A stretch of DNA of 64,000 nt from Laetmonice hystrix (GCA_965235115.1 OZ249445.1:21638001-21702000), one strand, 5' to 3'. Positions 1 to 22,483 are shown, counted from the first letter of the stretch. Numbers and translations: made by a program. Notes: generated by a model not told the origin, from the sequence alone.

Positions 1-335
1 AGCACACCTCCATCATCCCCTTGTCCATCTTTAGTGTCCTCAATCCAGAGGTTGAGGGATTCACGAAACTGATCAAACATGAACTTGGCTTCTTTGAGGT
101 AATTGTTTGAACTCTCAATCTCCTTCGTTTCAGTCAGCACTCCATGGTACTCATTTTGTGCGTCCACAAATCGCCGGTATGCACTGTCAAACTCGTCTGC
201 CAAGGCTGTGACCTGAGGGAGATTCTGTTTTGATTCCATAAGGTTATCGGCCCGAGTTGTTAAGCGGGTGACTGCAGCCTTTGCTATTCCTCTCCTTTTC
301 CTTAACGGCTCTTGGACATTTTCTTTAGCTGCCAT
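1..335 (-). CDS. gag: ORF1 (Gag N-terminal part) of unit 0, truncated by the window edge
   Basis: Same sequence as 7371..7705; ATG at 335-333 in a GCCATGG context. Confidence 0.9.
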   Translation of the reverse strand, partial: MAAKENVQEPLRKRRGIAKAAVTRLTTRADNLMESKQNLPQVTALADEFDSAYRRFVDAQNEYHGVLTETKEIESSNNYLKEAKFMFDQFRESLNLWIEDTKDGQGDDGGV

Positions 336-430
336 GGCTGGTTTTGATCCTTGGGTAGTGAATTTGTACTTAATGTAAGCAACGGGAATTCACATGGATT
401 CACAACTAACTGGTCCTTGGCTTGACTACT

Positions 431-436
431 TTTATT
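431..436 (-). terminator. Candidate poly(A) signal AATAAA in the LTR (same offset in every LTR)
   Basis: Plus strand tttatt at 431-436, 57 nt from the inferred LTR 3' end. Confidence 0.6.
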
Positions 437-548
437 TTCCTAGCCTCAGCCTCAGAGTCTCCCCAGCAAACCGTCACTCGTACACAATGACTCGCTGACA
501 CGTACGGTACAAACTGTAAATAAAGCAAAAGATACTTGCTAGTCCAAT

Positions 549-555
549 ATTTATA
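549..555 (-). promoter_or_regulatory. Candidate TATA box (TATAAAT) in the LTR
   Basis: Plus strand atttata at 549-555, ~115 nt upstream of the AATAAA on the element strand, consistent with U3-R-U5 order. Confidence 0.5.
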
Positions 556-850
556 ACCATTAGGCTAGACGTTCCCACTACATTAACCGAAACTCGAAAC
601 CAGAAGCCCCAAACACGTGGGGGCGATAATAGGGTTATTATTGGAGACGGAGATATTTTAGAGGTTTGTGTCGAAGGAGAAGAAAAACCAGTACATATAT
701 ATTAGACCCAAGAAGACATCAATACAAACTTAGTTCAAAGAAACTCACTTCACTGGGTTCCCATGGGTGAACATTATTCTAGAGGCTAAACCCAAACTGT
801 CGAGGACCACGCTAGTGCCGTCACAATCTCCGTGTTTTTTCTCCCCTCTC

Positions 851-892
851 CTCACCAGAGGGCACCCCATATCCCTCGCTCACCAGAGGGCT
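851..892 (+). promoter_or_regulatory. Two direct-repeat CTCF-like motifs (CTCACCAGAGGGCA / CTCACCAGAGGGCT) in the LTR
   Basis: 13-bp exact direct repeat ctcaccagagggc at 851-863 and 879-891; close to the CTCF core consensus CCACCAGRKGGCRS. Confidence 0.5.
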
Positions 893-930
893 CCACCAAC
901 TGGCTTGCCGCCTAGCAGTCAAACCTAACA

Positions 931-943
931 TTTCCCGGCCCCC
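931..943 (-). other. Polypurine tract (GGGGGCCGGGAAA) directly upstream of the LTR's TGT start
   Basis: Plus strand tttcccggccccc directly follows ...cctaaca at 930; repeated at every LTR. Confidence 0.8.
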
Positions 944-1120
944 AATGCCACTATAAGGGGCATTCCTAACTAATAATAAACAAACTGCTGCCCCACACTA
1001 AACGACAAAAGATTCACCTGACAAATACATATGCCGGGTACCAAACCCATCAGGCAAAAAAAAACATCAAAAAGGTGGGACTGAACACTCGCAGAAACAC
1101 TAGTTCTGCAATTCCACTGA

Positions 1121-1242
1121 TATAGTCAAATGTTCCAATGGTATATTCAAAAGGCTCCGCTGGTACAGTCAAAAGTTCCAATGGTATATTCAAAGGCTCC
1201 GCTGGTATAGTCAAATGTTCCAATGGTATATTCAGCAACTCC
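1121..1242. repeat. 3' UTR minisatellite: ~42-bp dimer of 21-bp monomers, ~2.7 dimers (present in every unit)
   Basis: tatagtcaaatgttccaatgg / tatattcaaa(a)ggctccgctgg alternate from 1121. Confidence 0.9.
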
Positions 1243-1469
1243 AAGAGTACACCAGTCAGCTTACGGAAAAGTTTCCATAGGTTCAGTAACACAAAGAGGC
1301 AAAGTCAACCTTGGTGCAAACCAGGTACAAAGGTATACAAAAAATCTAACCACAATGGCCAGTGCTGACAATAAATTCTCCCAGTGGTTGACATGACATA
1401 GGTGTACAGGAACAAACAATACTCCTGATAATACAGTACTAAACGTTCCTGTTTGAAAACAGGTGTTCC

Positions 1470-4400
1470 TTAAGGAACAGGTGCTGCCTCAAGCAAGCAC
1501 AGCTTGGTAATCGGTCGGTCATAGAGAGACCCATTAAATCTGATCTGTGCAGAACGAACTCGGTTGTCTCGTCCGGGGTAGATCTGAGTAACCAGACCAA
1601 GAGGCCACCGGTACCGCGGCATGGCCTCATGTCGAACCAACACCAGGTCTCCAACGCGGACATCCCTTTCAATGGTTGTCCACTTTTGTCGCTCCTGCAA
1701 CAAAGGCAAGTACTCTTTGGTCCAACGTGACCAAAACACATCGGCCAGGTACTGGACCTGGCGCCAACGGCGTCGATACAGATCTTGTTTGGCAGTCAAA
1801 CAAGGTGGCAAGGTGGGCCCAGACCGCAGCAGCAGCAAATGGTTTGGGGTCAGAGGCGTGTCATCGTTGGGGTCGTCAGACAACTTGGTTATAGGTCTCC
1901 CATTTACTATGCTTTCTGTAACACAGAATAGGGTGTTGAGGGAGTCATCGTCCAACCTTTGTTGTTGTAGGAGAGCTGTCAGAATGGCCCTCACGGTGCG
2001 GATTTGCCGCTCCCACACCCCTCCCATGTGGGAGGCCCCAGGAAGGTTGAACACCCACTGGACTTCCCTCTGCAGCAGAGCTTCACAGATCTTGCCTTGG
2101 TTCCACTCCTTAAGTGCCCTCCCCAACTCTGCCTTAGCCCCAACAAAGTTGGTGCCGTTGTCCGAGCGAATGACCTTGGGCTGACCCCGACGCGCCATAA
2201 ACCGATGAAGGGCATTCAGATAGGCATCCGTGTCGAGAGAAGTAGCCACTTCCAAATGAACTGCGCGAGTTGTGAGGCAAGTAAACAGGCATCCATATCG
2301 CTTCACTTCGGTGCGCCCTCGTCTCACAATGATTGGTCCAAAATAATCAACACCCACCATGCTGAAAGGAGGGTCTCCAGGTGTAACTCTGTCGGCAGGT
2401 AGGTCAGCCATCTGCTGCCTCATGGCACATGCTCGTGCCCGTTTGCATGGGACACACTGTCCAATGACAGCTCGAACAACGGAACGTCCGCTTACAAGCC
2501 AATAACGAAGCCTTATCTCCGCTAGAACCCGCTCGACCCCAGCGTGTCCCAATTTGATGTGGTAATGGCCCACAATGAGCCGGGCCACGTGATGCTTGGC
2601 AGGCACAATCCAAGGATGCCTTCTGTCCTGTGGGAGGTCTGCTCTGGCAAGCCTGCCTCCTACACATAATACTCCCTCGGAAGAGAGAGTGGGTGCTAGT
2701 CTCTCATATCGGTTAGATCTCAGGGTGTCCTTACTGAGGGCTTGCCGCTGAATGTACCGCACTATCGCAGCTTCCGCAGCCCGCAGGTCAGCAGTAGTTA
2801 ACCACCGGTGTTCATGAGCATCAGGTGCCTTGCACCGATTCCCAAGGTAGCCCACGAAACGCAACAACCAACCAACAGACTTGCACAAGCGGTACCATGA
2901 GGAATACTTGGCTAGCAGCTGGTCAATGATAGACGCCTGGTGGTCCTCCGTGGCATACACCTGCGCATCCTTCTTCACTTCTGCTTCATCAGGTGGTAGG
3001 TTTCCCTTGACTGGAGAAACTGGCCAGGAGTCCTCAGTCCGGTAGAGGAACTCAGGCCCTATGAGCCAACGCTCAGAGTGGCATAGTTCAGTAGCGGTGA
3101 GACCACGGGAGCAATCATCAGCAGGGTTGTCTTCCGTCCTGACATGTCTCCATTGCGAGGGTTTGCTGATTTCCATGATTTGGGCCACGCGATTAGCCAC
3201 AAAGGTCTGAAAACGCTTATCTTCATTGGCTAGGTACCACAGGACAATTGTGGAGTCTGTCCAAAAAACAGACCTCAACAGAGGGATTTCTAGGTCTTCC
3301 CTCAGCATACGGTCCAACTTGACCGCTTCCACGGCTGCCGTCAGCTCAAGCCTAGGAACAGTTGTAGTTTTCATAGGCGCTAGCTTGGCCTTTGCAGCCA
3401 GAAGACCCATGTGAATGACCTGGTCAACATCCACAACACGCAAATAACTGACAGCTCCATAAGCTCCAGTCGACGCGTCGGCAAAGTGGTGCAATTGGGC
3501 TGATATCATGGGACGACTGGGCTTCAGACAGCGAGGAACAGTGAAACTGGCAATGTTTGGCAAGTCTCCAAGCCACCGTGCCCATTGCAGAGACAGTCCG
3601 TCAGGCACACTTTCGTCCCAAGTGGTAGTCAAGCGGCAGGTTTCCTGGAAGATCAGCTTGGCCCGCAGGACGAACGGGCATACGAAACCCAAGGGATCGT
3701 ATACCGAGCTAAGAGTGCTGAGAATTCCCCGTTTAGTAACAGGCTTCCTCGTTGGAGTGACGTCATAACCAAACACATCCTCCTCAAGCTTCCATAGCAC
3801 TCCCAGTGCTCTCTCGGAGGGCAAGGATCCCCGGTCCAAGTCCAGGCTGGCAATACCTTTGGCGTGATCCTCCAGGGGGATAGTCTTGAGTAGTTCTCTT
3901 GAATTGCTGATCCATTTAGCGAGCCGAAACCCGCCCGTTTTTAGCAAACCACGAAGTTGTTGTGACAATCTGATGGCAGCAGGCAGTCCATCAACTGCTT
4001 TAAGACAGTCATCAACATAAAAGTTTCGTTGGACCGTCTTGATGGCTACATCATCAAACCGGTCCCTATTGTCATCTGCACATTTTCTGAGTGCATAATT
4101 TGCCGCACTGGGTGACCACACGCCACCAAACAAATGCGCTGTCATCCTGTATGTGGCAGGTTCCTGGTTCGGGTCGTCATTCTGCCACCAGAGGAAACGG
4201 AGCATATCACGGTCTTGGGGTGTGACTCTAACCTGGTGGAACATGGATTCCACATCAGCCATGAATGCCACGGGCTCCTGCCTAAATCTTATCAAGACGC
4301 CGACTAACTTGTTGGTGAGATCAGGACCCTGATGCACTTTATCGTTTAGGGAGACTCCTCGGAACTTTGCCGCACAATCAAACACGACGCGGACTTTCTC

Positions 4401-6509
4401 CGGCTTCCGGGGGCGAGTTACTGCGTGATGGGGAATGTAGTTGACATAGCCATCAATTTCGTTATTTGAGCCGGGCGAGACTGGCTCTGCATACCCCTTC
4501 GCGACCAGTTCCCTTATCTGAGTGGTATACAAAGCTCTGAGATCCTCGTCTCGAGTTAGGCGCCTGCCTAGCAACTTGAGTCTATGTTCGGCCATAGGTC
4601 GGTTGTCTGGCATGCATGGGGGTCTGTGTTTGAAGGGGATTCCAAAGGTGTAGTGACCATCACTCAAACAAGCAGTATTGTCCCACTCCTCAAGAACTCT
4701 CCGATCAGCTACTGATTGGGGCGTGACTGAGTTTCCCATATCCTCCAGTTCCCAGAAGCGGCCGACCTGTTGCTCTAGGGCTACAAAGCACGAGTAGACT
4801 GTATGGCTCCTGGCATCTCCAATTGGTCCATTTATGGTCCATCCCAAGAGGGTTCTTGAAGCGTAGGGTTCGCCCGGTCCACCTGAACGGAGTTCCAAGG
4901 GCATGAGGGCCTGTGGTACGTCGTTACCGATTATCAAATGCACTTCGTTTGAATTGGTGTTTGGAATCTCTATGCCATCAAAGTGTTTCCACTTCCCGAG
5001 TTCCTTATCCGACACCAAGCTGGTCAGCCCAACATAGATATTTGGACGGACGTAAACTGTCCTCAGATCGATAATCGATTGTTCCTCCAGATCAGATGCC
5101 TGGAGCCGTATCGACGTGGTCTGAAGCTTTTCCTTCCCGCTTAGGGTCATTAAATCCAGGGTTTCACACCTTCGGGCCGCCCCGAGCCTGTCAGCCAGGT
5201 GATTAGAACAGAAAGTGGCGGTACTCCCTGGATCCAGAAGTGCATAGGTATCCACATAGGCTGGCGACTGTAGGCCACGGACTCTAACAGGTACAATAGG
5301 CAAGGCAATCTTGCCTTCACGGGCCCCAGCAAAGCTACAACTGACTGTCTGGGATGTGCTAGCGGAGGTCTGAGCTCTTGAAACGGCTGGTGTCGCTGCA
5401 GGGAGGACAGTGGAATCACCTGTGGTTGATTGATTTGCAGTCTGCACATCTGCAGTCCTATTGGCATTTTCCCACCTCAGGTGCAAGAAACGGCTGTGTT
5501 TAAGGTTGCACCCATCAATTCCGCAAACAAATGACCGAGGACAATCTCTACCAAAATGACCTACATTGAAGCAGTTCATACAACGACCTGTTGATCGCAC
5601 TAGACCAATACGATCCTTGATCCTCATGGCTTTGAAAGCAGGGCATGCAACAATGGAGTGTTGATCACCACAACACCAGCAGAGGACTCTGGAGCCTGGA
5701 TCCTGGGCTTGAGGGGCCATAGTAGCACCACCTGGCGCTTGGAGTGATGCTTGCACTGCAAAGCTTCCCTTGTTTCGCTGCTTCATGTCGACTTTCTTCT
5801 CAGAAGGCTTCCTCTCAGAGGTCAGATCAGCCAGTGCACCAAACACAGGATCGGAAACCTCGCTTGCTGCCAACTCAATGAACTTCACCACATCCTCCAA
5901 ACTAGGCCTTCTGTGACGCTTTATCTCCTGGTTCTTGGATAACCAACGTGTTCTCAGGCGTTGCGGGAGCTTCTCGAGAATGGTCCTTAAATTTTGTGCA
6001 CTTTCCAACTCGTGAAGATATCCCATCGTTTCCAGGGTTTCCTTGCAGCAGCGTAACACATCTGCATACTCTTGGAGGCCAACATTGCCTGTCAACTGCG
6101 AATGATTACAGATCCTTTCAATCCAAGCCTGCGAGATTATATTTTCATCCCCAAACCGCTCTTTCAAGAGTTTTCTGGCAAGGCGATATCCATCAGGAGG
6201 TGGGAGTACTTCACAACACTGGAGCAAGTTGCGAGCCTTGCCTGTGCAATATTGTAACAGAGCATTAAGTTTGACGCCATCACTAATAGTGTCTCTCTCC
6301 AAGGTGTGATCAAACCGCCTGATAAACGACCAATACTGTAACGGATTTCCATCAAAGTAGGTCAATTCTGACTTTGGCAACTGCAGACTTTCCACCAAGG
6401 ATTGGTGTTGCCGCTGTGTGGCGTCGAGCATGCTGTACAAGACATGTGAGACATCAGGAGATCCCTGGGGCCCTATTGCAGATGGGTCCCATGAACGGTG
6501 TGACCTCAT
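1470..6509 (-). CDS. pol: ORF2, 1679 aa Gag(C-terminal)-Pol polyprotein, unit 1, intact
   Basis: Gag capsid-like LPKSELTYFDGNPLQYWSF (DUF1759-like); three Cys/His motifs CWCCGDQHSIVAC, CMNCFNVGHFGRDC, CGIDGCNLKHSRFLH; protease ALLDPGS (5226-5234); RT VRVVFDCAA, ADVESMFHQV, FYVDD (4008-4019); RNase H HHFADAS, PRLEL, FWTDS, DNPADDCSRG; integrase HHCC, VDYFGP, SDNGTNF, GVWER; C-terminal WRQVQYLADVFWSRW. Domain names come from motif recognition, not a database search. Confidence 0.95.
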   Translation of the reverse strand: MRSHRSWDPSAIGPQGSPDVSHVLYSMLDATQRQHQSLVESLQLPKSELTYFDGNPLQYWSFIRRFDHTLERDTISDGVKLNALLQYCTGKARNLLQCCEVLPPPDGYRLARKLLKERFGDENIISQAWIERICNHSQLTGNVGLQEYADVLRCCKETLETMGYLHELESAQNLRTILEKLPQRLRTRWLSKNQEIKRHRRPSLEDVVKFIELAASEVSDPVFGALADLTSERKPSEKKVDMKQRNKGSFAVQASLQAPGGATMAPQAQDPGSRVLCWCCGDQHSIVACPAFKAMRIKDRIGLVRSTGRCMNCFNVGHFGRDCPRSFVCGIDGCNLKHSRFLHLRWENANRTADVQTANQSTTGDSTVLPAATPAVSRAQTSASTSQTVSCSFAGAREGKIALPIVPVRVRGLQSPAYVDTYALLDPGSTATFCSNHLADRLGAARRCETLDLMTLSGKEKLQTTSIRLQASDLEEQSIIDLRTVYVRPNIYVGLTSLVSDKELGKWKHFDGIEIPNTNSNEVHLIIGNDVPQALMPLELRSGGPGEPYASRTLLGWTINGPIGDARSHTVYSCFVALEQQVGRFWELEDMGNSVTPQSVADRRVLEEWDNTACLSDGHYTFGIPFKHRPPCMPDNRPMAEHRLKLLGRRLTRDEDLRALYTTQIRELVAKGYAEPVSPGSNNEIDGYVNYIPHHAVTRPRKPEKVRVVFDCAAKFRGVSLNDKVHQGPDLTNKLVGVLIRFRQEPVAFMADVESMFHQVRVTPQDRDMLRFLWWQNDDPNQEPATYRMTAHLFGGVWSPSAANYALRKCADDNRDRFDDVAIKTVQRNFYVDDCLKAVDGLPAAIRLSQQLRGLLKTGGFRLAKWISNSRELLKTIPLEDHAKGIASLDLDRGSLPSERALGVLWKLEEDVFGYDVTPTRKPVTKRGILSTLSSVYDPLGFVCPFVLRAKLIFQETCRLTTTWDESVPDGLSLQWARWLGDLPNIASFTVPRCLKPSRPMISAQLHHFADASTGAYGAVSYLRVVDVDQVIHMGLLAAKAKLAPMKTTTVPRLELTAAVEAVKLDRMLREDLEIPLLRSVFWTDSTIVLWYLANEDKRFQTFVANRVAQIMEISKPSQWRHVRTEDNPADDCSRGLTATELCHSERWLIGPEFLYRTEDSWPVSPVKGNLPPDEAEVKKDAQVYATEDHQASIIDQLLAKYSSWYRLCKSVGWLLRFVGYLGNRCKAPDAHEHRWLTTADLRAAEAAIVRYIQRQALSKDTLRSNRYERLAPTLSSEGVLCVGGRLARADLPQDRRHPWIVPAKHHVARLIVGHYHIKLGHAGVERVLAEIRLRYWLVSGRSVVRAVIGQCVPCKRARACAMRQQMADLPADRVTPGDPPFSMVGVDYFGPIIVRRGRTEVKRYGCLFTCLTTRAVHLEVATSLDTDAYLNALHRFMARRGQPKVIRSDNGTNFVGAKAELGRALKEWNQGKICEALLQREVQWVFNLPGASHMGGVWERQIRTVRAILTALLQQQRLDDDSLNTLFCVTESIVNGRPITKLSDDPNDDTPLTPNHLLLLRSGPTLPPCLTAKQDLYRRRWRQVQYLADVFWSRWTKEYLPLLQERQKWTTIERDVRVGDLVLVRHEAMPRYRWPLGLVTQIYPGRDNRVRSAQIRFNGSLYDRPITKLCLLEAAPVP

Positions 6510-7705
6510 TGGGTCATCAGTGGAACTGGTGTGTGGGCTTGACGGCTGCCCCCCTGGGAGTGCCTCGTGGCAGACATAGGTGTAGAGGAAGTGAGGTCCT
6601 CTCCCCTGGGGTTCCCGTCTGGTTTCTTATTCGTGGAACTTGGGTTTGGGTTTGACGGCCAGCCCCCCTGGGAGTACCTCGGGGCAGACATAGGTGTAGA
6701 TGAAATGAGGTCATCTCCCCTGGGGTTCCCGTCTGGTTTCTTATCCGTGGAACTTGGGTTTGGGTTTGACGGCCAGCCCCCCTGGGAGTACCTCGGGGCA
6801 GACATAGGTGTAGATGAAATGAGGTCATCTCCCCTGGGGTTCCCGTCAGGTTTCTTATCCATGGAACTGGGTTTTGGGTTTGACGGCCAGCCCCCCTGGG
6901 AGTACCTCGGTGCAGACATAGGTGTAGAGGAAGTGAGATCATCTCCCCTGGGGTTCCCGTCAGGTTTCTTATCCATGGAACTGAGTTTTGGGTTTGACGG
7001 CCAGCCCCCCTGGGAGTACCTCGGGGCAGACATAGGTGTAGAGGAAGTGAGGTCATCTCCCCTGGGGTTCCCGTCAGGTTTCTCTTCATCCCACTCATCC
7101 AGTTCTCGATGCATCCTTTGCAGTTCCAAATAACGTTCCCTTTGTTCCTGCTTGAATTGTATCTCCAGCTTAATTCTCTCTCGTTTCAACTTGCTCTCCC
7201 GTTCCATTAGCTCCCGCTTTAATTCGTAATCCCGGATCATCAGGTCTTCACGAACGCGCAGCTCATTCAGTTGTGCCTCGCTGTGCCGCACAGACTGTTC
7301 CAGGTCGGTCTCGGTATCCTCGGGTTCAGTCTCTTTTGCTGTATCAGCTACAACATCAAAAGGTGTGGTCAGCACACCTCCATCATCCCCTTGTCCATCT
7401 TTAGTGTCCTCAATCCAGAGGTTGAGGGATTCACGAAACTGATCAAACATGAACTTGGCTTCTTTGAGGTAATTGTTTGAACTCTCAATCTCCTTCGTTT
7501 CAGTCAGCACTCCATGGTACTCATTTTGTGCGTCCACAAATCGCCGGTATGCACTGTCAAACTCGTCTGCCAAGGCTGTGACCTGAGGGAGATTCTGTTT
7601 TGATTCCATAAGGTTATCGGCCCGAGTTGTTAAGCGGGTGACTGCAGCCTTTGCTATTCCTCTCCTTTTCCTTAACGGCTCTTGGACATTTTCTTTAGCT
7701 GCCAT
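6506..7705 (-). CDS. gag: ORF1, 399 aa Gag N-terminal region (helical/coiled-coil plus 38-aa repeats), unit 1
   Basis: Strong Kozak GCCATGG 39 nt after the LTR; RKRRGIAKAAVTRL helical start; E/K/R-rich coiled coil; stop overlaps the ORF2 ATG (ATGA). Confidence 0.85.
   Translation of the reverse strand: MAAKENVQEPLRKRRGIAKAAVTRLTTRADNLMESKQNLPQVTALADEFDSAYRRFVDAQNEYHGVLTETKEIESSNNYLKEAKFMFDQFRESLNLWIEDTKDGQGDDGGVLTTPFDVVADTAKETEPEDTETDLEQSVRHSEAQLNELRVREDLMIRDYELKRELMERESKLKRERIKLEIQFKQEQRERYLELQRMHRELDEWDEEKPDGNPRGDDLTSSTPMSAPRYSQGGWPSNPKLSSMDKKPDGNPRGDDLTSSTPMSAPRYSQGGWPSNPKPSSMDKKPDGNPRGDDLISSTPMSAPRYSQGGWPSNPNPSSTDKKPDGNPRGDDLISSTPMSAPRYSQGGWPSNPNPSSTNKKPDGNPRGEDLTSSTPMSATRHSQGGSRQAHTPVPLMTQ
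6515..7085 (-). repeat. Five tandem 114-bp (38-aa) repeats inside ORF1; equivalents at ~13885-14455, 21255-21825, 28615-29185, 35976-36546, 43346-43916, 50716-51286, 58076-58646
   Basis: ctcccctggggttcccgtc recurs at 6601, 6715, 6829, 6943, 7057; peptide KPDGNPRGDDL(T/I)SSTPMSAPRYSQGGWPSNPxxSSxDK. Confidence 0.95.
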
Positions 7706-7743
7706 GGCTGGTTTTGATCCTTGGGTAGTGAATTTGTACTTAA

Positions 7744-8300
7744 TGTAAGCAACGGGAATTCACATGGATTCACAACTAACTGGTCCTTGGCTTGACTACT
7801 TTTATTTTCCTAGCCTCAGCCTCAGAGTCTCCCCAGCAAACCGTCACTCGTACACAATGACTCGCTGACACGTACGGTACAAACTGTAAATAAAGCAAAA
7901 GATACTTGCTAGTCCAATATTTATAACCATTAGGCTAGACGTTCCCACTACATTAACCGAAACTCGAAACCAGAAGCCCCAAACACGTGGGGGCGATAAT
8001 AGGGTTATTATTGGAGACGGAGATATTTTAGAGGTTTGTGTCGAAGGAGAAGAAAAACCAGTACATATATATTAGACCCAAGAAGACATCAATACAAACT
8101 TAGTTCAAAGAAACTCACTTCACTGGGTTCCCATGGGTGAACATTATTCTAGAGGCTAAACCCAAACTGTCGAGGACCACGCTAGTGCCGTCACAATCTC
8201 CGTGTTTTTTCTCCCCTCTCCTCACCAGAGGGCACCCCATATCCCTCGCTCACCAGAGGGCTCCACCAACTGGCTTGCCGCCTAGCAGTCAAACCTAACA
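7744..8300 (-). repeat. LTR copy 1 (shared by units 1 and 2)
   Basis: Same sequence as 374..930. Confidence 0.8.
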
Positions 8301-8839
8301 TTTCCCGGCCCCCAATGCCACTATAAGGGGCATTCCTAACTAATAATAAACAAACTGCTGCCCCACACTAAACGACAAAAGATTCACCTGACAAATACAT
8401 ATGCCGGGTACCAAACCCATCAGGCAAAAAAAAACATCAAAAAGGTGGGACTGAACACTCGCAGAAACACTAGTTCTGCAATTCCACTGATATAGTCAAA
8501 TGTTCCAATGGTATATTCAAAAGGCTCCGCTGGTACAGTCAAAAGTTCCAATGGTATATTCAAAGGCTCCGCTGGTATAGTCAAATGTTCCAATGGTATA
8601 TTCAGCAACTCCAAGAGTACACCAGTCAGCTTACGGAAAAGTTTCCATAGGTTCAGTAACACAAAGAGGCAAAGTCAACCTTGGTGCAAACCAGGTACAA
8701 AGGTATACAAAAAATCTAACCACAATGGCCAGTGCTGACAATAAATTCTCCCAGTGGTTGACATGACATAGGTGTACAGGAACAAACAATACTCCTGATA
8801 ATACAGTACTAAACGTTCCTGTTTGAAAACAGGTGTTCC

Positions 8840-11800
8840 TTAAGGAACAGGTGCTGCCTCAAGCAAGCACAGCTTGGTAATCGGTCGGTCATAGAGAGAC
8901 CCATTAAATCTGATCTGTGCAGAACGAACTCGGTTGTCTCGTCCGGGGTAGATCTGAGTAACCAGACCAAGAGGCCACCGGTACCGCGGCATGGCCTCAT
9001 GTCGAACCAACACCAGGTCTCCAACGCGGACATCCCTTTCAATGGTTGTCCACTTTTGTCGCTCCTGCAACAAAGGCAAGTACTCTTTGGTCCAACGTGA
9101 CCAAAACACATCGGCCAGGTACTGGACCTGGCGCCAACGGCGTCGATACAGATCTTGTTTGGCAGTCAAACAAGGTGGCAAGGTGGGCCCAGACCGCAGC
9201 AGCAGCAAATGGTTTGGGGTCAGAGGCGTGTCATCGTTGGGGTCGTCAGACAACTTGGTTATAGGTCTCCCATTTACTATGCTTTCTGTAACACAGAATA
9301 GGGTGTTGAGGGAGTCATCGTCCAACCTTTGTTGTTGTAGGAGAGCTGTCAGAATGGCCCTCACGGTGCGGATTTGCCGCTCCCACACCCCTCCCATGTG
9401 GGAGGCCCCAGGAGGGTTGAACACCCACTGGACTTCCCTCTGCAGCAGAGCTTCACAGATCTTGCCTTGGTTCCACTCCTTAAGTGCCCTCCCCAACTCT
9501 GCCTTAGCCCCAACAAAGTTGGTGCCGTTGTCCGAGCGAATGACCTTGGGCTGACCCCGACGCGCCATAAACCGATGAAGGGCATTCAGATAGGCATCCG
9601 TGTCGAGAGAAGTAGCCACTTCCAAATGAACTGCGCGAGTTGTGAGGCAAGTAAACAGGCATCCATATCGCTTCACTTCGGTGCGCCCTCGTCTCACAAT
9701 GATTGGTCCAAAATAATCAACACCCACCATGCTGAAAGGAGGGTCTCCAGGTGTAACTCTGTCGGCAGGTAGGTCAGCCATCTGCTGCCTCATGGCACAT
9801 GCTCGTGCCCGTTTGCATGGGACACACTGTCCAATGACAGCTCGAACAACGGAACGTCCGCTTACAAGCCAATAACGAAGCCTTATCTCCGCTAGAACCC
9901 GCTCGACCCCAGCGTGTCCCAATTTGATGTGGTAATGGCCCACAATGAGCCGGGCCACGTGATGCTTGGCAGGCACAATCCAAGGATGCCTTCTGTCCTG
10001 TGGGAGGTCTGCTCTGGCAAGCCTGCCTCCTACACATAATACTCCCTCGGAAGAGAGAGTGGGTGCTAGTCTCTCATATCGGTTAGATCTCAGGGTGTCC
10101 TTACTGAGGGCTTGCCGCTGAATGTACCGCACTATCGCAGCTTCCGCAGCCCGCAGGTCAGCAGTAGTTAACCACCGGTGTTCATGAGCATCAGGTGCCT
10201 TGCACCGATTCCCAAGGTAGCCCACGAAACGCAACAACCAACCAACAGACTTGCACAAGCGGTACCATGAGGAATACTTGGCTAGCAGCTGGTCAATGAT
10301 AGACGCCTGGTGGTCCTCCGTGGCATACACCTGCGCATCCTTCTTCACTTCTGCTTCATCAGGTGGTAGGTTTCCCTTGACTGGAGAAACTGGCCAGGAG
10401 TCCTCAGTCCGGTAGAGGAACTCAGGCCCTATGAGCCAACGCTCAGAGTGGCATAGTTCAGTAGCGGTGAGACCACGGGAGCAATCATCAGCAGGGTTGT
10501 CTTCCGTCCTGACATGTCTCCATTGCGAGGGTTTGCTGATTTCCATGATTTGGGCCACGCGATTAGCCACAAAGGTCTGAAAACGCTTATCTTCATTGGC
10601 TAGGTACCACAGGACAATTGTGGAGTCTGTCCAAAAAACAGACCTCAACAGAGGGATTTCTAGGTCTTCCCTCAGCATACGGTCCAACTTGACCGCTTCC
10701 ACGGCTGCCGTCAGCTCAAGCCTAGGAACAGTTGTAGTTTTCATAGGCGCTAGCTTGGCCTTTGCAGCCAGAAGACCCATGTGAATGACCTGGTCAACAT
10801 CCACAACACGCAAATAACTGACAGCTCCATAAGCTCCAGTCGACGCGTCGGCAAAGTGGTGCAATTGGGCTGATATCATGGGACGACTGGGCTTCAGACA
10901 GCGAGGAACAGTGAAACTGGCAATGTTTGGCAAGTCTCCAAGCCACCGTGCCCATTGCAGAGACAGTCCGTCAGGCACACTTTCGTCCCAAGTGGTAGTC
11001 AAGCGGCAGGTTTCCTGGAAGATCAGTTTGGCCCGCAGGACGAACGGGCATACGAAACCCAAGGGATCGTATACCGAGCTAAGAGTGCTGAGAATTCCCC
11101 GTTTAGTAACAGGCTTCCTCGTTGGAGTGACGTCATAACCAAACACATCCTCCTCAAGCTTCCATAGCACTCCCAGTGCTCTCTCGGAGGGCAAGGATCC
11201 CCGGTCCAAGTCCAGGCTGGCAATACCTTTGGCGTGATCCTCCAGGGGGATAGTCTTGAGTAGTTCTCTTGAATTGCTGATCCATTTAGCGAGCCGAAAC
11301 CCGCCCGTTTTTAGCAAACCACGAAGTTGTTGTGACAATCTGATGGCAGCAGGCAGTCCATCAACTGCTTTAAGACAGTCATCAACATAAAAGTTTCGTT
11401 GGACCGTCTTGATGGCTACATCATCAAACCGGTCCCTATTGTCATCTGCACATTTTCTGAGTGCATAATTTGCCGCACTGGGTGACCACACGCCACCAAA
11501 CAAATGCGCTGTCATCCTGTATGTGGCAGGTTCCTGGTTCGGGTCGTCATTCTGCCACCAGAGGAAACGGAGCATATCACGGTCTTGGGGTGTGACTCTA
11601 ACCTGGTGGAACATGGATTCCACATCAGCCATGAATGCCACGGGCTCCTGCCTAAATCTTATCAAGACGCCGACTAACTTGTTGGTGAGATCAGGACCCT
11701 GATGCACTTTATCGTTTAGGGAGACTCCTCGGAACTTTGCCGCACAATCAAACACGACGCGGACTTTCTCCGGCTTCCGGGGGCAAGTTACTGCGTGATG

Positions 11801-13879
11801 GGGAATGTAGTTGACATAGCCATCAATTTCGTCATTTGAGCCGGGCGAGACTGGCTCTGCATACCCCTTCGCGACCAGTTCCCTTATCTGAGTGGTATAC
11901 AAAGCTCTGAGATCCTCGTCTCGAGTTAGGCGCCTGCCTAGCAACTTGAGTCTATGTTCGGCCATAGGTCGGTTGTCTGGCATGCATGGGGGTCTGTGTT
12001 TGAAGGGGATTCCAAAGGTGTAGTGACCATCACTCAAACAAGCAGTATTGTCCCACTCCTCAAGAACTCTCCGATCAGCTACTGATTGGGGCGTGACTGA
12101 GTTTCCCATATCCTCCAGTTCCCAGAAGCGGCCGACCTGTTGCTCTAGGGCTACAAAGCACGAGTAGACTGTATGGCTCCTGGCATCTCCAATTGGTCCA
12201 TTTATGGTCCATCCCAAGAGGGTTCTTGAAGCGTAGGGTTCGCCCGGTCCACCTGAACGGAGTTCCAAGGGCATGAGGGCCTGTGGTACGTCGTTACCGA
12301 TTATCAAATGCACTTCGTTTGAATTGGTGTTTGGAATCTCTATGCCATCAAAGTGTTTCCACTTCCCGAGTTCCTTATCCGACACCAAGCTGGTCAGCCC
12401 AACATAGATATTTGGACGGACGTAAACTGTCCTCAGATCGATAATCGATTGTTCCTCCAGATCAGATGCCTGGAGCCGTATCGACGTGGTCTGAAGCTTT
12501 TCCTTCCCGCTTAGGGTCATTAAATCCAGGGTTTCACACCTTCGGGCCGCCCCGAGCCTGTCAGCCAGGTGATTAGAACAGAAAGTGGCGGTACTCCCTG
12601 GATCCAGAAGTGCATAGGTATCCACATAGGCTGGCGACTGTAGGCCACGGACTCTAACAGGTACAATAGGCAAGGCAATCTTGCCTTCACGGGCCCCAGC
12701 AAAGCTACAACTGACTGTCTGGGATGTGCTAGCGGAGGTCTGAGCTCTTGAAACGGCTGGTGTCGCTGCAGGGAGGACAGTGGAATCACCTGTGGTTGAT
12801 TGATTTGCAGTCTGCACATCTGCAGTCCTATTGGCATTTTCCCACCTCAGGTGCAAGAAACGGCTGTGTTTAAGGTTGCACCCATCAATTCCGCAAACAA
12901 ATGACCGAGGACAATCTCTACCAAAATGACCTACATTGAAGCAGTTCATACAACGACCTGTTGATCGCACTAGACCAATACGATCCTTGATCCTCATGGC
13001 TTTGAAAGCAGGGCATGCAACAATGGAGTGTTGATCACCACAACACCAGCAGAGGACTCTGGAGCCTGGATCCTGGGCTTGAGGGGCCATAGTAGCACCA
13101 CCTGGCGCTTGGAGTGATGCTTGCACTGCAAAGCTTCCCTTGTTTCGCTGCTTCATGTCGACTTTCTTCTCAGAAGGCTTCCTCTCAGAGGTCAGATCAG
13201 CCAGTGCACCAAACACAGGATCGGAAACCTCGCTTGCTGCCAACTCAATGAACTTCACCACATCCTCCAAACTAGGCCTTCTGTGACGCTTTATCTCCTG
13301 GTTCTTGGATAACCAACGTGTTCTCAGGCGTTGCGGGAGCTTCTCGAGAATGGTCCTTAAATTTTGTGCACTTTCCAACTCGTGAAGATATCCCATCGTT
13401 TCCAGGGTTTCCTTGCAGCAGCGTAACACATCTGCATACTCTTGGAGGCCAACATTGCCTGTCAACTGCGAATGATTACAGATCCTTTCAATCCAAGCCT
13501 GCGAGATTATATTTTCATCCCCAAACCGCTCTTTCAAGAGTTTTCTGGCAAGGCGATATCCATCAGGAGGTGGGAGTACTTCACAACACTGGAGCAAGTT
13601 GCGAGCCTTGCCTGTGCAATATTGTAACAGAGCATTAAGTTTGACGCCATCACTAATAGTGTCTCTCTCCAAGGTGTGATCAAACCGCCTGATAAACGAC
13701 CAATACTGTAACGGATTTCCATCAAAGTAGGTCAATTCTGACTTTGGCAACTGCAGACTTTCCACCAAGGATTGGTGTTGCCGCTGTGTGGCGTCGAGCA
13801 TGCTGTACAAGACATGTGAGACATCAGGAGATCCCTGGGGCCCTATTGCAGATGGGTCCCATGAACGGTGTGACCTCAT
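8840..13879 (-). CDS. pol: ORF2 Gag-Pol, 1679 aa, unit 2, intact
   Basis: Same motifs as unit 1; carries the TCPRK variant (11785). Confidence 0.95.
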   Translation of the reverse strand: MRSHRSWDPSAIGPQGSPDVSHVLYSMLDATQRQHQSLVESLQLPKSELTYFDGNPLQYWSFIRRFDHTLERDTISDGVKLNALLQYCTGKARNLLQCCEVLPPPDGYRLARKLLKERFGDENIISQAWIERICNHSQLTGNVGLQEYADVLRCCKETLETMGYLHELESAQNLRTILEKLPQRLRTRWLSKNQEIKRHRRPSLEDVVKFIELAASEVSDPVFGALADLTSERKPSEKKVDMKQRNKGSFAVQASLQAPGGATMAPQAQDPGSRVLCWCCGDQHSIVACPAFKAMRIKDRIGLVRSTGRCMNCFNVGHFGRDCPRSFVCGIDGCNLKHSRFLHLRWENANRTADVQTANQSTTGDSTVLPAATPAVSRAQTSASTSQTVSCSFAGAREGKIALPIVPVRVRGLQSPAYVDTYALLDPGSTATFCSNHLADRLGAARRCETLDLMTLSGKEKLQTTSIRLQASDLEEQSIIDLRTVYVRPNIYVGLTSLVSDKELGKWKHFDGIEIPNTNSNEVHLIIGNDVPQALMPLELRSGGPGEPYASRTLLGWTINGPIGDARSHTVYSCFVALEQQVGRFWELEDMGNSVTPQSVADRRVLEEWDNTACLSDGHYTFGIPFKHRPPCMPDNRPMAEHRLKLLGRRLTRDEDLRALYTTQIRELVAKGYAEPVSPGSNDEIDGYVNYIPHHAVTCPRKPEKVRVVFDCAAKFRGVSLNDKVHQGPDLTNKLVGVLIRFRQEPVAFMADVESMFHQVRVTPQDRDMLRFLWWQNDDPNQEPATYRMTAHLFGGVWSPSAANYALRKCADDNRDRFDDVAIKTVQRNFYVDDCLKAVDGLPAAIRLSQQLRGLLKTGGFRLAKWISNSRELLKTIPLEDHAKGIASLDLDRGSLPSERALGVLWKLEEDVFGYDVTPTRKPVTKRGILSTLSSVYDPLGFVCPFVLRAKLIFQETCRLTTTWDESVPDGLSLQWARWLGDLPNIASFTVPRCLKPSRPMISAQLHHFADASTGAYGAVSYLRVVDVDQVIHMGLLAAKAKLAPMKTTTVPRLELTAAVEAVKLDRMLREDLEIPLLRSVFWTDSTIVLWYLANEDKRFQTFVANRVAQIMEISKPSQWRHVRTEDNPADDCSRGLTATELCHSERWLIGPEFLYRTEDSWPVSPVKGNLPPDEAEVKKDAQVYATEDHQASIIDQLLAKYSSWYRLCKSVGWLLRFVGYLGNRCKAPDAHEHRWLTTADLRAAEAAIVRYIQRQALSKDTLRSNRYERLAPTLSSEGVLCVGGRLARADLPQDRRHPWIVPAKHHVARLIVGHYHIKLGHAGVERVLAEIRLRYWLVSGRSVVRAVIGQCVPCKRARACAMRQQMADLPADRVTPGDPPFSMVGVDYFGPIIVRRGRTEVKRYGCLFTCLTTRAVHLEVATSLDTDAYLNALHRFMARRGQPKVIRSDNGTNFVGAKAELGRALKEWNQGKICEALLQREVQWVFNPPGASHMGGVWERQIRTVRAILTALLQQQRLDDDSLNTLFCVTESIVNGRPITKLSDDPNDDTPLTPNHLLLLRSGPTLPPCLTAKQDLYRRRWRQVQYLADVFWSRWTKEYLPLLQERQKWTTIERDVRVGDLVLVRHEAMPRYRWPLGLVTQIYPGRDNRVRSAQIRFNGSLYDRPITKLCLLEAAPVP

Positions 13880-15075
13880 TGGGTCATCAGTGGAACTGGT
13901 GTGTGGGCTTGACGGCTGCCCCCCTGGGAGTGCCTCGTGGCAGACATAGGTGTAGAGGAAGTGAGGTCCTCTCCCCTGGGGTTCCCGTCTGGTTTCTTAT
14001 TCGTGGAACTTGGGTTTGGGTTTGACGGCCAGCCCCCCTGGGAGTACCTCGGGGCAGACATAGGTGTAGATGAAATGAGGTCATCTCCCCTGGGGTTCCC
14101 GTCTGGTTTCTTATCCGTGGAACTTGGGTTTGGGTTTGACGGCCAGCCCCCCTGGGAGTACCTCGGGGCAGACATAGGTGTAGATGAAATGAGGTCATCT
14201 CCCCTGGGGTTCCCGTCAGGTTTCTTATCCATGGAACTGGGTTTTGGGTTTGACGGCCAGCCCCCCTGGGAGTACCTCGGTGCAGACATAGGTGTAGAGG
14301 AAGTGAGATCATCTCCCCTGGGGTTCCCGTCAGGTTTCTTATCCATGGAACTGAGTTTTGGGTTTGACGGCCAGCCCCCCTGGGAGTACCTCGGGGCAGA
14401 CATAGGTGTAGAGGAAGTGAGGTCATCTCCCCTGGGGTTCCCGTCAGGTTTCTCTTCATCCCACTCATCCAGTTCTCGATGCATCCTTTGCAGTTCCAAA
14501 TAACGTTCCCTTTGTTCCTGCTTGAATTGTATCTCCAGCTTAATTCTCTCTCGTTTCAACTTGCTCTCCCGTTCCATTAGCTCCCGCTTTAATTCGTAAT
14601 CCCGGATCATCAGGTCTTCACGAACGCGCAGCTCATTCAGTTGTGCCTCGCTGTGCCGCACAGACTGTTCCAGGTCGGTCTCGGTATCCTCGGGTTCAGT
14701 CTCTTTTGCTGTATCAGCTACAACATCAACAGGTGTGGTCAGCACACCTCCATCATCCCCTTGTCCATCTTTAGTGTCCTCAATCCAGAGGTTGAGGGAT
14801 TCACGAAACTGATCAAACATGAACTTGGCTTCTTTGAGGTAATTGTTTGAACTCTCAATCTCCTTCGTTTCAGTCAGCACTCCATGGTACTCATTTTGTG
14901 CGTCCACAAATCGCCGGTATGCACTGTCAAACTCGTCTGCCAAGGCTGTGACCTGAGGGAGATTCTGTTTTGATTCCATAAGGTTATCGGCCCGAGTTGT
15001 TAAGCGGGTGACTGCAGCCTTTGCTATTCCTCTCCTTTTCCTTAACGGCTCTTGGACATTTTCTTTAGCTGCCAT
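13876..15075 (-). CDS. gag: ORF1 Gag N-terminal region, unit 2
   Basis: 399-aa copy of the unit 1 ORF1. Confidence 0.85.
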   Translation of the reverse strand: MAAKENVQEPLRKRRGIAKAAVTRLTTRADNLMESKQNLPQVTALADEFDSAYRRFVDAQNEYHGVLTETKEIESSNNYLKEAKFMFDQFRESLNLWIEDTKDGQGDDGGVLTTPVDVVADTAKETEPEDTETDLEQSVRHSEAQLNELRVREDLMIRDYELKRELMERESKLKRERIKLEIQFKQEQRERYLELQRMHRELDEWDEEKPDGNPRGDDLTSSTPMSAPRYSQGGWPSNPKLSSMDKKPDGNPRGDDLTSSTPMSAPRYSQGGWPSNPKPSSMDKKPDGNPRGDDLISSTPMSAPRYSQGGWPSNPNPSSTDKKPDGNPRGDDLISSTPMSAPRYSQGGWPSNPNPSSTNKKPDGNPRGEDLTSSTPMSATRHSQGGSRQAHTPVPLMTQ

Positions 15076-15113
15076 GGCTGGTTTTGATCCTTGGGTAGTG
15101 AATTTGTACTTAA

Positions 15114-15670
15114 TGTAAGCAACGGGAATTCACATGGATTCACAACTAACTGGTCCTTGGCTTGACTACTTTTATTTTCCTAGCCTCAGCCTCAGAGTCT
15201 CCCCAGCAAACCGTCACTCGTACACAATGACTCGCTGACACGTACGGTACAAACTGTAAATAAAGCAAAAGATACTTGCTAGTCCAATATTTATAACCAT
15301 TAGGCTAGACGTTCCCACTACATTAACCGAAACTCGAAACCAGAAGCCCCAAACACGTGGGGGCGATAATAGGGTTATTATTGGAGACGGAGATATTTTA
15401 GAGGTTTGTGTCGAAGGAGAAGAAAAACCAGTACATATATATTAGACCCAAGAAGACATCAATACAAACTTAGTTCAAAGAAACTCACTTCACTGGGTTC
15501 CCATGGGTGAACATTATTCTAGAGGCTAAACCCAAACTGTCGAGGACCACGCTAGTGCCGTCACAATCTCCGTGTTTTTTCTCCCCTCTCCTCACCAGAG
15601 GGCACCCCATATCCCTCGCTCACCAGAGGGCTCCACCAACTGGCTTGCCGCCTAGCAGTCAAACCTAACA
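15114..15670 (-). repeat. LTR copy 2
   Basis: Same sequence as 374..930. Confidence 0.8.
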
Positions 15671-16209
15671 TTTCCCGGCCCCCAATGCCACTATAAGGGG
15701 CATTCCTAACTAATAATAAACAAACTGCTGCCCCACACTAAACGACAAAAGATTCACCTGACAAATACATATGCCGGGTACCAAACCCATCAGGCAAAAA
15801 AAAACATCAAAAAGGTGGGACTGAACACTCGCAGAAACACTAGTTCTGCAATTCCACTGATATAGTCAAATGTTCCAATGGTATATTCAAAAGGCTCCGC
15901 TGGTACAGTCAAAAGTTCCAATGGTATATTCAAAGGCTCCGCTGGTATAGTCAAATGTTCCAATGGTATATTCAGCAACTCCAAGAGTACACCAGTCAGC
16001 TTACGGAAAAGTTTCCATAGGTTCAGTAACACAAAGAGGCAAAGTCAACCTTGGTGCAAACCAGGTACAAAGGTATACAAAAAATCTAACCACAATGGCC
16101 AGTGCTGACAATAAATTCTCCCAGTGGTTGACATGACATAGGTGTACAGGAACAAACAATACTCCTGATAATACAGTACTAAACGTTCCTGTTTGAAAAC
16201 AGGTGTTCC

Positions 16210-22445: not shown

Positions 22446-22483
22446 GGCTGGTTTTGATCCTTGGGTAGTGAATTTGTACTTAA

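What the first reader, a model, noticed from the sequence alone, without database searches (positions are those of the whole stretch)
6506..6629. Gag is split by a 1-nt frameshift at a G6 run, with an ATGA stop-start overlap, in all eight copies
Seen: repeats 1-4 read CAG GGG GGC TGG CCG TCA AAC CCA, but repeat 5 reads CAG GGG GGC AG CCG TCA AGC CCA, one base shorter (G6 = plus-strand C 6549-6554). Adding one base gives ...SQGGQPSSPHTSSTDDPMRSH..., which aligns with the repeat consensus SQGGWPSNPNPSSTD and fuses ORF1 and ORF2 into one polyprotein of ~2,080 aa. The ORF2 frame is open back to a TAA at 6627-6629. G GGG GGC is in X XXY YYZ phase (non-canonical). A -1 slip at the same motif in repeats 1-4 would hit a TAA a few codons later. 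ORF1 also stops on ATGA overlapping the ORF2 ATG (weak Kozak), within the loop of a 5-bp stem TGACC/GGTCA (6501-6516). The break lies upstream of the capsid domain, not at the usual gag/pol boundary. Known: Bel/Pao elements often have one gag-pol ORF; -1 frameshifting, polymerase slippage on homopolymers and AUGA/UAAUG termination-reinitiation are all used by viruses or retroelements. Inference: either an unusual recoding site, or a founder mutation, meaning a disabled element was amplified.
Basis: partly seen in the sequence, partly recalled or inferred. Interest (0 to 1): 0.72.

Follow-up and report, generated by a model that had tools for sequence, protein, structure and literature searches.

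The report
One broken retrotransposon copy, amplified tandemly
The split in this retrotransposon's main gene is real in the sequence, but it looks like one ordinary inactivating frame break, copied eight times when the DNA duplicated in tandem, and not like a programmed recoding signal.

Summary
A 399-aa ORF1 and a 1679-aa ORF2 lie on the minus strand. ORF2 is in the -1 frame, the two share an ATGA stop-start overlap, and a G6 run sits in the fifth 114-nt repeat. The junction is identical in all eight copies.

Those eight copies are not independent. The whole window is a head-to-tail array of 7.37-kb units, each with one internal region and one LTR-bearing spacer, differing at only 11 sites among the eight units. 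That is DNA-level amplification of a single copy, so the break has been observed once.

The closest relative (71% identical in ORF2) and every other informative relative encode the ORF1-like N-terminal domain and the DUF1759 capsid-like domain in one continuous frame. That relative has neither the G run nor the ATG.

I found no support for recoding. No RNA structure downstream of the run beats shuffled sequence. The same heptamer occurs four more times upstream and leads to dead ends there. There is no UGGGA motif upstream of the ATGA, and an ATGA overlap arises at 7-9% of random break sites. Differences between units look neutral: 7 nonsynonymous against 2 synonymous changes, plus two pol-breaking indels.

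Verdict: a founder frame break in one Bel/Pao copy that became a tandem array. A systematic assembly error is the main rival. Programmed recoding is unlikely.

The parts
1..64000 (-). Head-to-tail tandem array of about 8.7 units of a Bel/Pao LTR retrotransposon. Unit length is 7360-7371 bp. The array runs off both ends of the window.
   Evidence: Start-to-start spacing is 7370/7360/7361 with 100% identity over 300-nt probes. Eight full units show only 9 SNP columns plus 2 indels. ORF pairs recur every unit.
6506..7705 (-). ORF1, 399 aa: a conserved N-terminal Gag module (residues 1-~205) followed by five 38-aa repeats and a 13-residue out-of-frame tail. Its ATG is in a strong context (GCCATGG).
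   Evidence: Translation. No Pfam family. The N-module is 43-45% identical to residues 1-249 of P0001 and is conserved in 13 relatives. The AF2 model has pLDDT 86.6 and shows a three-helix bundle plus a long helix.
6506..7075 (-). Five tandem 114-nt (38-aa) repeats in the Gag linker. Repeats 1-4 are 93-100% alike. Repeat 5 (6506-6619) is the diverged one and carries the break.
   Evidence: The closest relative L001 has a single unit.
6546..6554 (-). Break zone: the G6 run (6549-6554) plus the following bases. The sequence here is one nucleotide shorter than repeats 1-4 and than the relative L001. ORF1 and ORF2 frames diverge here, with ORF2 at -1.
6506..6509 (-). ATGA: the ORF2 ATG (6507-6509) overlaps the ORF1 TGA (6506-6508). 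The ATG context is weak (CCAATGA).
   Evidence: The Met is absent at the homologous position of L001. The chance rate of such an overlap is 7-9%.
1470..6509 (-). ORF2, 1679 aa. Domain order: DUF1759 (capsid-like Gag domain), Cys/His knuckles, aspartic protease, RT, Pao peptidase_A17 region, integrase (H2C2 + rve), DUF5641.
   Evidence: Pfam scan. 71% identical over 1688 columns to P0001.
7744..8195 (-). Putative single LTR of the unit (TGT...ACA ends), with a TATAAATA box near 7925 and an AATAAA near 7806. The boundaries are inferred, not shown.
   Evidence: Read directly. There is no second LTR-size direct repeat in the 1134-nt spacer. The TACATTA at the inferred 3' edge is shared with the 5' leader of L001.
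8197..8226 (-). Purine-rich tract, a candidate polypurine tract just upstream of the inferred LTR start.
   Evidence: Read directly. This is an inference.
25892..25913 (-). Site of a 10-bp deletion that breaks pol in this unit. The same deletion is at 33253-33274 and 55353-55374.
32550..32570 (-). Site of a 1-bp insertion that breaks pol in this unit. The same insertion is at 62011-62031.

Best explanation
One copy of a young Bel/Pao (Belpaoviridae) LTR retrotransposon acquired a one-nucleotide frame break. The break lies in the repeat-rich linker between its N-terminal Gag module and its capsid-like DUF1759 domain. In this clade those two parts are normally one continuous gag-pol ORF.

That single copy was then multiplied as DNA into a head-to-tail array with one shared LTR between neighbouring internal regions. 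The likely route is unequal exchange between LTRs, followed by further unequal exchange among units. Every unit inherited the break.

As sequenced, a scanning ribosome would make only the 399-aa N-terminal fragment. Capsid, protease, RT and integrase would not be translated at useful levels. The array units are therefore most likely non-autonomous and are decaying neutrally.

The G GGG GGC phase and the ATGA overlap are by-products. The first comes from the repeat's Gln-Gly-Gly coding. The second is simply where the first out-of-frame stop falls.

**Shown:** the anatomy, the array structure, the fused architecture of relatives, and the absence of recoding signals.
**Inferred:** that the break is a true mutation rather than a consensus error, and the route by which the array formed.
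For: 1. **Array, not dispersed copies.** There are 7.37-kb units, one LTR-bearing spacer per unit, and no internal LTR-size repeat. Eight units differ at 9 SNP columns plus 2 indels.
2. **Fused architecture is ancestral.** P0001/L001 is a single 1947-aa ORF. Its residues 5-249 match ORF1 (43%) and its residues 269 onward match ORF2 from residue 3 (71%).
3. **Other relatives agree.** At least 12 further long relatives carry the N-module 200-350 aa upstream of DUF1759 in the same protein. Mid-length hits of the exhaustive search do too.
4. **Apparent exceptions are breaks elsewhere.** Two short look-alikes, L003 and L004, break inside DUF1759 and not in the linker. L002 keeps both parts in one frame.
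5. **No stand-alone ORF1.** A word search found no ORF1-like protein of 219-698 aa.
6. **No recoding signals.**
   - Folds downstream of the run give z = +0.44 and +1.30.
   - No helix of 6 bp or more starts 3-10 nt after the heptamer, and repeats 1-4 have equal or better helices.
   - No UGGGA occurs in the 150 nt upstream of the ATGA, and 27 ATG triplets lie before the ORF2 start.
   - Rfam returns nothing.
7. **Putative signals are not conserved.** L001 reads CAG GGA CCC CAG at the site and has no ATG at the restart position.
8. **Units show no coding constraint.** There are 7 nonsynonymous and 2 synonymous differences. A 10-bp deletion and a 1-bp insertion break pol in 4 of the 9 visible pol copies.
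9. **Functional logic.** The break lies upstream of capsid and nucleocapsid, so it cannot set a Gag:Pol ratio, which is the usual reason for retroelement frameshifting (established knowledge).
10. **Literature.**
    - Tandem LTR elements with shared LTRs are a known product of LTR-LTR exchange (PMC5932611, PMC11899658).
    - Bel/Pao copies are scored as potentially active only when they have one ORF without frameshifts (PMC3087523).
Against: - Apart from this one break, ORF1 and ORF2 are fully open in 5 of 8 units. A single defect sitting exactly at a homopolymer in formal X XXY YYZ phase is also what a recoding site or a consensus error would look like.
- A -1 slip at the run would give a product exactly colinear with relatives.
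- No dispersed copies, reads or RNA of the host were available, so the state of the site outside this array is unknown.
- The between-unit substitution counts are small.
Confidence: 0.76

Rival explanations
1. Consensus or assembly artefact. The true sequence has one more nucleotide at or next to the G run, and the element has an ordinary single gag-pol ORF. A systematic homopolymer miscall, or polishing with reads cross-mapped from repeats 1-4, produced the same error in every unit.
For: - The break sits at or next to a homopolymer, inside a 114-nt repeat, inside a 7.4-kb tandem repeat. All of these are hard contexts for consensus calling.
- It is the only defect in otherwise open ORFs in 5 of 8 units.
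- The ORF2-frame reading is colinear with relatives.
Against: - All 72 homopolymers of 6 nt or more, and 136 of 5 nt or more, have identical lengths across the eight units. Stochastic homopolymer error is therefore very low.
- The same CCCAGGGGGGC context is called G6 in 32 in-frame instances.
- No other coding homopolymer is out of frame.
- The assembly resolves single SNPs and a 1-bp insertion that differ between units, which argues for accurate long reads.
Confidence: 0.13
2. Programmed -1 ribosomal frameshifting, or polymerase slippage during transcription, at G GGG GGC in repeat 5 makes a small amount of full-length N-module-capsid-Pol fusion. Most ribosomes would make the N-terminal protein alone.
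For: - The heptamer is in the correct phase. After a -1 slip both glycine tRNAs can re-pair at their first two positions, which follows directly from the sequence.
- The product would be colinear with relatives.
- The -1 frame is open only after the fifth heptamer.
Against: - Efficient -1 frameshifting needs a stimulator 5-8 nt downstream (PMC6321510), and none is found.
- From my own recollection of the classic slippery-site mutagenesis work, a GGG A-site triplet is a poor slippery sequence in eukaryotic systems. This was not checked here.
- Four identical heptamers upstream would each divert ribosomes to a dead end.
- The closest relative lacks the run and is unsplit.
- No relative is split at this linker.
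- The break lies upstream of capsid, so it would make capsid and Pol equally scarce.
- The units carry further uncorrected pol breaks.
Confidence: 0.04
3. Termination-reinitiation at the ATGA overlap. After finishing ORF1 the ribosome restarts at the overlapping ATG and makes capsid-Pol without the N-module.
For: A 4-nt stop-start overlap is present in all units. It lies in the loop of a small hairpin.
Against: - From my own knowledge of the calicivirus and influenza B cases, reinitiation after a 399-codon ORF in eukaryotes needs a dedicated upstream element such as a TURBS with a UGGGA core. None occurs in the 150 nt upstream.
- The ATG context is weak.
- The Met is not conserved in the closest relative.
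- The hairpin is not better than shuffles (z = -0.87).
- The overlap is expected at 7-9% of random breaks.
Confidence: 0.03

Closest known systems
Bel/Pao LTR retrotransposons (Belpaoviridae) with a single gag-pol ORF, such as BEL, Pao, Sinbad and roo-type elements
   Same: The domain set and order are the same: DUF1759 Gag domain, Cys/His knuckles, protease, RT, Pao peptidase_A17 region, integrase, DUF5641. The closest relatives are single ORFs of 1850-2060 aa. Copies with frameshifts are routinely treated as defective (PMC554778, PMC3087523).
   Different: This copy is split by a one-nucleotide frame offset in the Gag linker. It carries a lineage-specific five-fold 38-aa repeat there. It sits in a tandem array rather than as a two-LTR insertion.
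Tandem LTR-retrotransposon arrays with shared LTRs (Drosophila, rice and other plants)
   Same: The structure is head-to-tail internal region, LTR, internal region, with one LTR between neighbours. Units are nearly identical and the variant-sharing pattern shows further unequal exchange. This matches what is described in PMC5932611 (Fig. 1A) and PMC11899658.
   Different: This array has at least 8.7 units and more than 64 kb of a Bel/Pao element in an unidentified animal-type genome. Published tandems are mostly dimers or short arrays of gypsy or copia elements.
Retroviral and retrotransposon -1 programmed frameshift sites at the gag/pol boundary
   Same: There is a heptamer in X XXY YYZ phase, and the downstream ORF is in the -1 frame.
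   Different: - The site has a GGG triplet in the A-site position.
- There is no downstream stimulator.
- The site lies upstream of capsid and not at gag/pol.
- The split is not conserved in relatives.
- The heptamer is repeated five times, and only the last repeat is productive.
Termination-reinitiation at AUGA/UAAUG overlaps (calicivirus VP1/VP2, influenza B M1/BM2)
   Same: There is a four-nucleotide stop-start overlap.
   Different: There is no upstream UGGGA-type element. The start codon is not conserved. The overlap is explicable by chance.

Membership tests
Bel/Pao LTR retrotransposon (Belpaoviridae) | Pol with the Pao-type peptidase_A17 region, RT, and integrase with a C-terminal DUF5641, in the order PR-RT-RH-IN | tested here: met
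   Pfam: PF05380 at 6.6e-45, PF18701 at 1.5e-31, PF17921, PF00665, PF00078 and Asp_protease_2, in that order.
Bel/Pao LTR retrotransposon (Belpaoviridae) | Gag with a DUF1759 domain and Cys/His knuckles upstream of the protease | tested here: met
   PF03564 at residues 52-197 of ORF2. CxxC...H...C motifs are visible in the translation.
Bel/Pao LTR retrotransposon (Belpaoviridae) | Two long terminal repeats flanking the internal region, with target-site duplication | not testable with these tools
   There is only one LTR-bearing spacer per unit, and the array runs off both ends of the window. The LTR boundaries at 7744-8195 are inferred from TGT..ACA ends, a TATA box, AATAAA and an adjacent purine tract.
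Programmed -1 ribosomal frameshift site | In-phase X XXY YYZ slippery heptamer | tested here: inconclusive
   G GGG GGC is in phase. However, it is not one of the canonical A/U-rich A-site triplets. It also occurs in identical phase in four non-productive repeats.
Programmed -1 ribosomal frameshift site | Stimulatory hairpin or pseudoknot 5-8 nt downstream (PMC6321510) | tested here: not met
   MFE z-scores are +0.44 (78 nt) and +1.30 (108 nt). The only helix is weak, 5 bp with 2 G-C pairs, at spacer 3. Rfam gives no match. Pseudoknots were not modelled explicitly.
Programmed -1 ribosomal frameshift site | Conservation of the two-ORF arrangement and slip site in related elements | tested here: not met
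   The closest relative is one ORF and lacks the run. No relative is split at this linker.
Programmed -1 ribosomal frameshift site | Detectable trans-frame product | not testable with these tools
   This needs a reporter assay, ribosome profiling or proteomics.
Termination-reinitiation (TURBS-type) | Stop and restart codons overlapping or adjacent | tested here: met
   ATGA at 6506-6509 in all units. The chance expectation is 7-9%.
Termination-reinitiation (TURBS-type) | Upstream 18S-complementary motif (UGGGA core) within about 100 nt | tested here: not met
   No TGGGA in the 150 nt upstream.
Transcriptional slippage site | Heterogeneous run length in transcripts | not testable with these tools
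   No RNA reads of the host are available. The host is absent from the searched collections.
Tandem LTR-retrotransposon array with shared LTRs | Head-to-tail units, each one internal region plus exactly one LTR | tested here: met
   Unit period is 7360-7371 bp. The 1134-nt spacer has no internal LTR-size direct repeat.

The most novel reading that the evidence does not exclude
The break is a functional recoding site: low-level -1 slippage by the ribosome or the polymerase at a G6 run. It would let a Belpaoviridae element make a free N-terminal helical Gag module in large excess over a capsid-Pol fusion. That would be a gag-internal expression switch not described for this family.
Probability: 0.04. 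Interest if true: 0.6.

Novelty: new member of a known kind. Interest (0 to 1): 0.15.

Why it matters
As it stands, this matters little. It is a cautionary example: identical features across the copies of a tandem array are one observation, not eight. A frame break at a homopolymer in an otherwise open retroelement needs independent copies or reads before recoding is invoked.

Two side results are modestly useful for annotating transposable elements. The first is a long Bel/Pao tandem array with shared LTRs and a higher-order pattern. The second is a conserved N-terminal Gag module of this clade that has no Pfam family, modelled as a three-helix bundle plus a long helix.

If the recoding reading were true, it would be a new expression strategy for Belpaoviridae.

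Tried and rejected
- **Exact-sequence look-ups** of ORF1 and ORF2 in public assemblies found nothing on record. The host and its dispersed copies could not be examined.
- **Word search with a 299-aa ORF2-frame piece spanning the junction**, meant to catch fragments from the same species: the best hit was only 54% identical.
- **Metagenome scan for the junction** with a variable-length gap at the run gave 0 hits. A protein-guided scan found only relatives at 41-50% identity.
- **Paper search for the sample accession** of the closest relative gave 0 papers, so the organism stays unknown.
- **Two short N-module proteins that looked like stand-alone ORF1s in the -1 arrangement** (P0073/L003, and P0075/L004 with a 4-nt overlap call) turned out to be degraded copies broken inside DUF1759 at other positions. 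I rejected them as evidence for a recurrent split.
- **Fold search of the N-module model against PDB** gave no significant match (best E 0.099).
- **Rfam scan of one unit** found nothing.
- **dN/dS against L001** was considered and dropped, because synonymous sites are saturated at 71% and 43% amino-acid identity.
- **No read-through or joined ORF1+ORF2 protein was built, searched or folded.** The two pieces were searched apart.
- **No consensus of the units was made.**
- **Nothing in the window or the fetched loci looked human.**

Full report
**What is there**

The window is entirely a head-to-tail array, on the minus strand, of a 7.37-kb unit. Start-to-start spacings are 7370, 7360 or 7361 bp, and 300-nt probes are 100% identical between units.

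Each unit has four parts:
- a 399-aa ORF1;
- a 1679-aa ORF2 in the -1 frame;
- an ATGA overlap joining the two;
- a 1134-nt non-coding spacer.

ORF2 has the full Bel/Pao complement in order: DUF1759, Cys/His knuckles, aspartic protease, RT, the Pao peptidase_A17 region, integrase and DUF5641.

ORF1 has no Pfam family. It consists of a 205-residue N-terminal module followed by five 38-aa (114-nt) repeats.

**Check of the observation**

- G6 at 6549-6554;
- ATGA at 6506-6509;
- TAA at 6627-6629;
- the TGACC/GGTCA stem at 6501-6516;
- repeat 5 one nucleotide shorter than repeats 1-4 in the stretch after the run;
- an ORF2-frame reading that continues the repeat homology.

A 60-nt junction string is identical in all eight units.

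Two refinements matter.

First, the run is G6 in all 40 repeat instances, and 32 of them are in frame. The missing nucleotide therefore cannot be assigned to the run itself. It lies somewhere between the run and the following AG.

Second, the eight copies are not independent, as the next section shows.

**The copies are one event**

The spacer holds no LTR-size internal direct repeat, so each unit has at most one LTR. I infer the LTR at about 7744-8195 from four features read:
- TGT...ACA ends;
- a TATA box;
- an AATAAA;
- an adjacent purine tract.

An array of internal region, LTR, internal region and so on is the known product of unequal exchange between LTRs, or of a single complex insertion (PMC5932611, PMC11899658). 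It is not the product of repeated retrotransposition.

The eight complete units differ at only nine SNP columns, one 10-bp deletion and one 1-bp insertion. Variants are shared between units four apart and also recombined. For example, one unit has both indels and others have one each. This indicates continuing unequal exchange inside a real array.

Of the nine SNPs, seven are nonsynonymous and two synonymous. The two indels break pol in four of the nine visible pol copies. There is no sign of coding constraint since amplification.

**What relatives look like**

The closest relative in the protein collection, P0001, comes from locus L001, a 6.2-kb Logan contig. It is a single 1947-aa ORF.
- Its residues 5-249 align with ORF1 at 43% identity (E = 6e-52).
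- Its residues 269 onward align with ORF2 from residue 3 at 71% identity.
- The two pieces of the window's element are therefore colinear with one continuous protein.
- L001 has only one copy of the 38-aa unit.
- At the site it reads CAG GGA CCC CAG, with no G run, and it has no ATG at the position of the ORF2 start.

Other relatives agree:
- At least twelve further relatives of 1185-2026 aa carry a recognisable N-module at their own N-terminus, 200-350 residues upstream of DUF1759 in the same protein.
- A word search with ORF1 found no stand-alone protein of 219-698 aa.
- Because the argument leans on absence, I ran the exhaustive HMMER search with ORF1 residues 1-235. It gave 20 hits, all with the module at the N-terminus. 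Those long enough, at 479 aa or more, also contain DUF1759.
- Two hits of about 390-400 aa looked at first like ORF1/ORF2 pairs in the -1 arrangement. They are degraded copies broken inside DUF1759 at other positions, with the linker crossed in frame.
- L002 also keeps both parts in one frame.

The split at this linker is thus unique to the window's element among everything retrievable.

**Tests of recoding**

*-1 frameshifting.* The heptamer G GGG GGC is in phase, but efficient -1 frameshifting needs a stimulator 5-8 nt downstream (PMC6321510).
- The 78 and 108 nt after the heptamer fold no better than shuffles (z = +0.44 and +1.30).
- The only helix starting 3-10 nt downstream is 5 bp with two G-C pairs. 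The four non-productive repeats have equal or better helices.
- Rfam finds nothing.
- The same heptamer in repeats 1-4 leads to a stop after 13 codons, so an efficient slip would mostly waste ribosomes.

*Reinitiation.*
- No UGGGA core occurs in the 150 nt upstream.
- The ATG context is weak.
- The hairpin is unremarkable (z = -0.87).
- The Met is not conserved.
- An ATGA on the first in-frame ATG is expected at 7-9% of random break sites. The first out-of-frame stop falls a median of 11-14 codons downstream, against 15 observed.

*Leaky scanning.* This is excluded by 27 intervening ATG triplets.

*Functional logic.* The break is upstream of capsid and nucleocapsid, so it cannot serve the usual purpose of setting a Gag:Pol ratio.

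**Assembly error**

I cannot see reads. Several points argue against both random and general systematic homopolymer error:
- All 72 homopolymers of 6 nt or more have the same length across the eight units.
- No other coding homopolymer is out of frame.
- The same 11-nt context is called G6 in 32 in-frame places.
- The assembly resolves unit-specific SNPs and a 1-bp insertion.

A site-specific polishing artefact remains possible. I give it about 0.13.

**Conclusion**

The most likely history has four steps:
1. A young Bel/Pao copy suffered a one-nucleotide frame break in its Gag linker.
2. LTR-mediated unequal exchange turned that copy into a tandem array.
3. All units inherited the break.
4. 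The units are now drifting.

Reverse-transcriptase or replication slippage near a run is a common source of such errors. That statement rests on my own knowledge and was not tested here.

The correction is that the amplification was of DNA in tandem. The recoding alternative is not supported by any test available here, though only wet-lab or read-level data can exclude it.

**Limits and rules followed**

- The host species is unidentified and absent from the collections. Dispersed copies, reads and transcripts could not be examined.
The pieces were searched apart. I describe where the break is but not a change that would remove it.
- The window has no N stretches.
- Nothing looked human.

Noticed in passing
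window 1-64000 (units start on the minus strand at plus-coordinates about 59272, 51912, 44542, 37172, 29811, 22451, 15081, 7711): The array has higher-order structure. Several variants are shared by units four apart: two SNPs in units 3 and 7, one SNP in units 4 and 8, and the 10-bp deletion in units 1 and 5. The two pol indels also occur in all combinations (neither, one, both). This implies block duplication plus exchange or conversion between units.
   Followed up: partly
window 7091-7705 (-) and the N-termini of P0001, P0004-P0007, P0009, P0011-P0013, P0017, P0018, P0020, P0062: A conserved N-terminal Gag module of this Bel/Pao clade has no Pfam family. Its motif is LKxxRGxAKxxVTR ... YH..LL ... 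Y ... W. The AF2 model (pLDDT 86.6) shows a three-helix bundle at residues 2-109, a disordered acidic stretch at 110-130 and a long helix at 131-208. There is no significant PDB fold match.
   Followed up: partly
window 6620-7075 (-): The 38-aa linker unit is expanded four to five fold in this lineage (units 93-100% identical). The closest relative has the unit only once. The expansion is in frame in ORF1.
   Followed up: partly
window 8477-8624: A 21/42-nt tandem repeat of about 5 overlapping copies lies in the roughly 600-nt untranslated region between the pol stop and the candidate polypurine tract. Its function is unknown.
   Followed up: no
window 25892-25913, 33253-33274, 55353-55374; 32550-32570, 62011-62031: Secondary pol-breaking lesions are confined to some units: a 10-bp deletion in three units and a 1-bp insertion in two. 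Neither is at a homopolymer.
   Followed up: yes
window 1621-2184 (+), 6567-7133 (+) and their copies in each unit: Antisense ORFs of 187-188 aa lie opposite pol and opposite the Gag repeats. They are probably chance open frames, the second one being inside the repeats.
   Followed up: no
P0045: A fish gene model named CNK3/IPCEF1 fusion protein-like (Neoarius graeffei, 1383 aa) contains a DUF1759 segment 35-36% identical to ORF2. It is probably a Bel/Pao Gag fragment absorbed into a host gene prediction.
   Followed up: no
L002 8001-10972: This is a degraded relative, 60-65% identical in DUF1759. It has an in-frame stop in the linker and a hAT-transposase-like ORF inserted between the DUF1759 pieces.
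   Followed up: no
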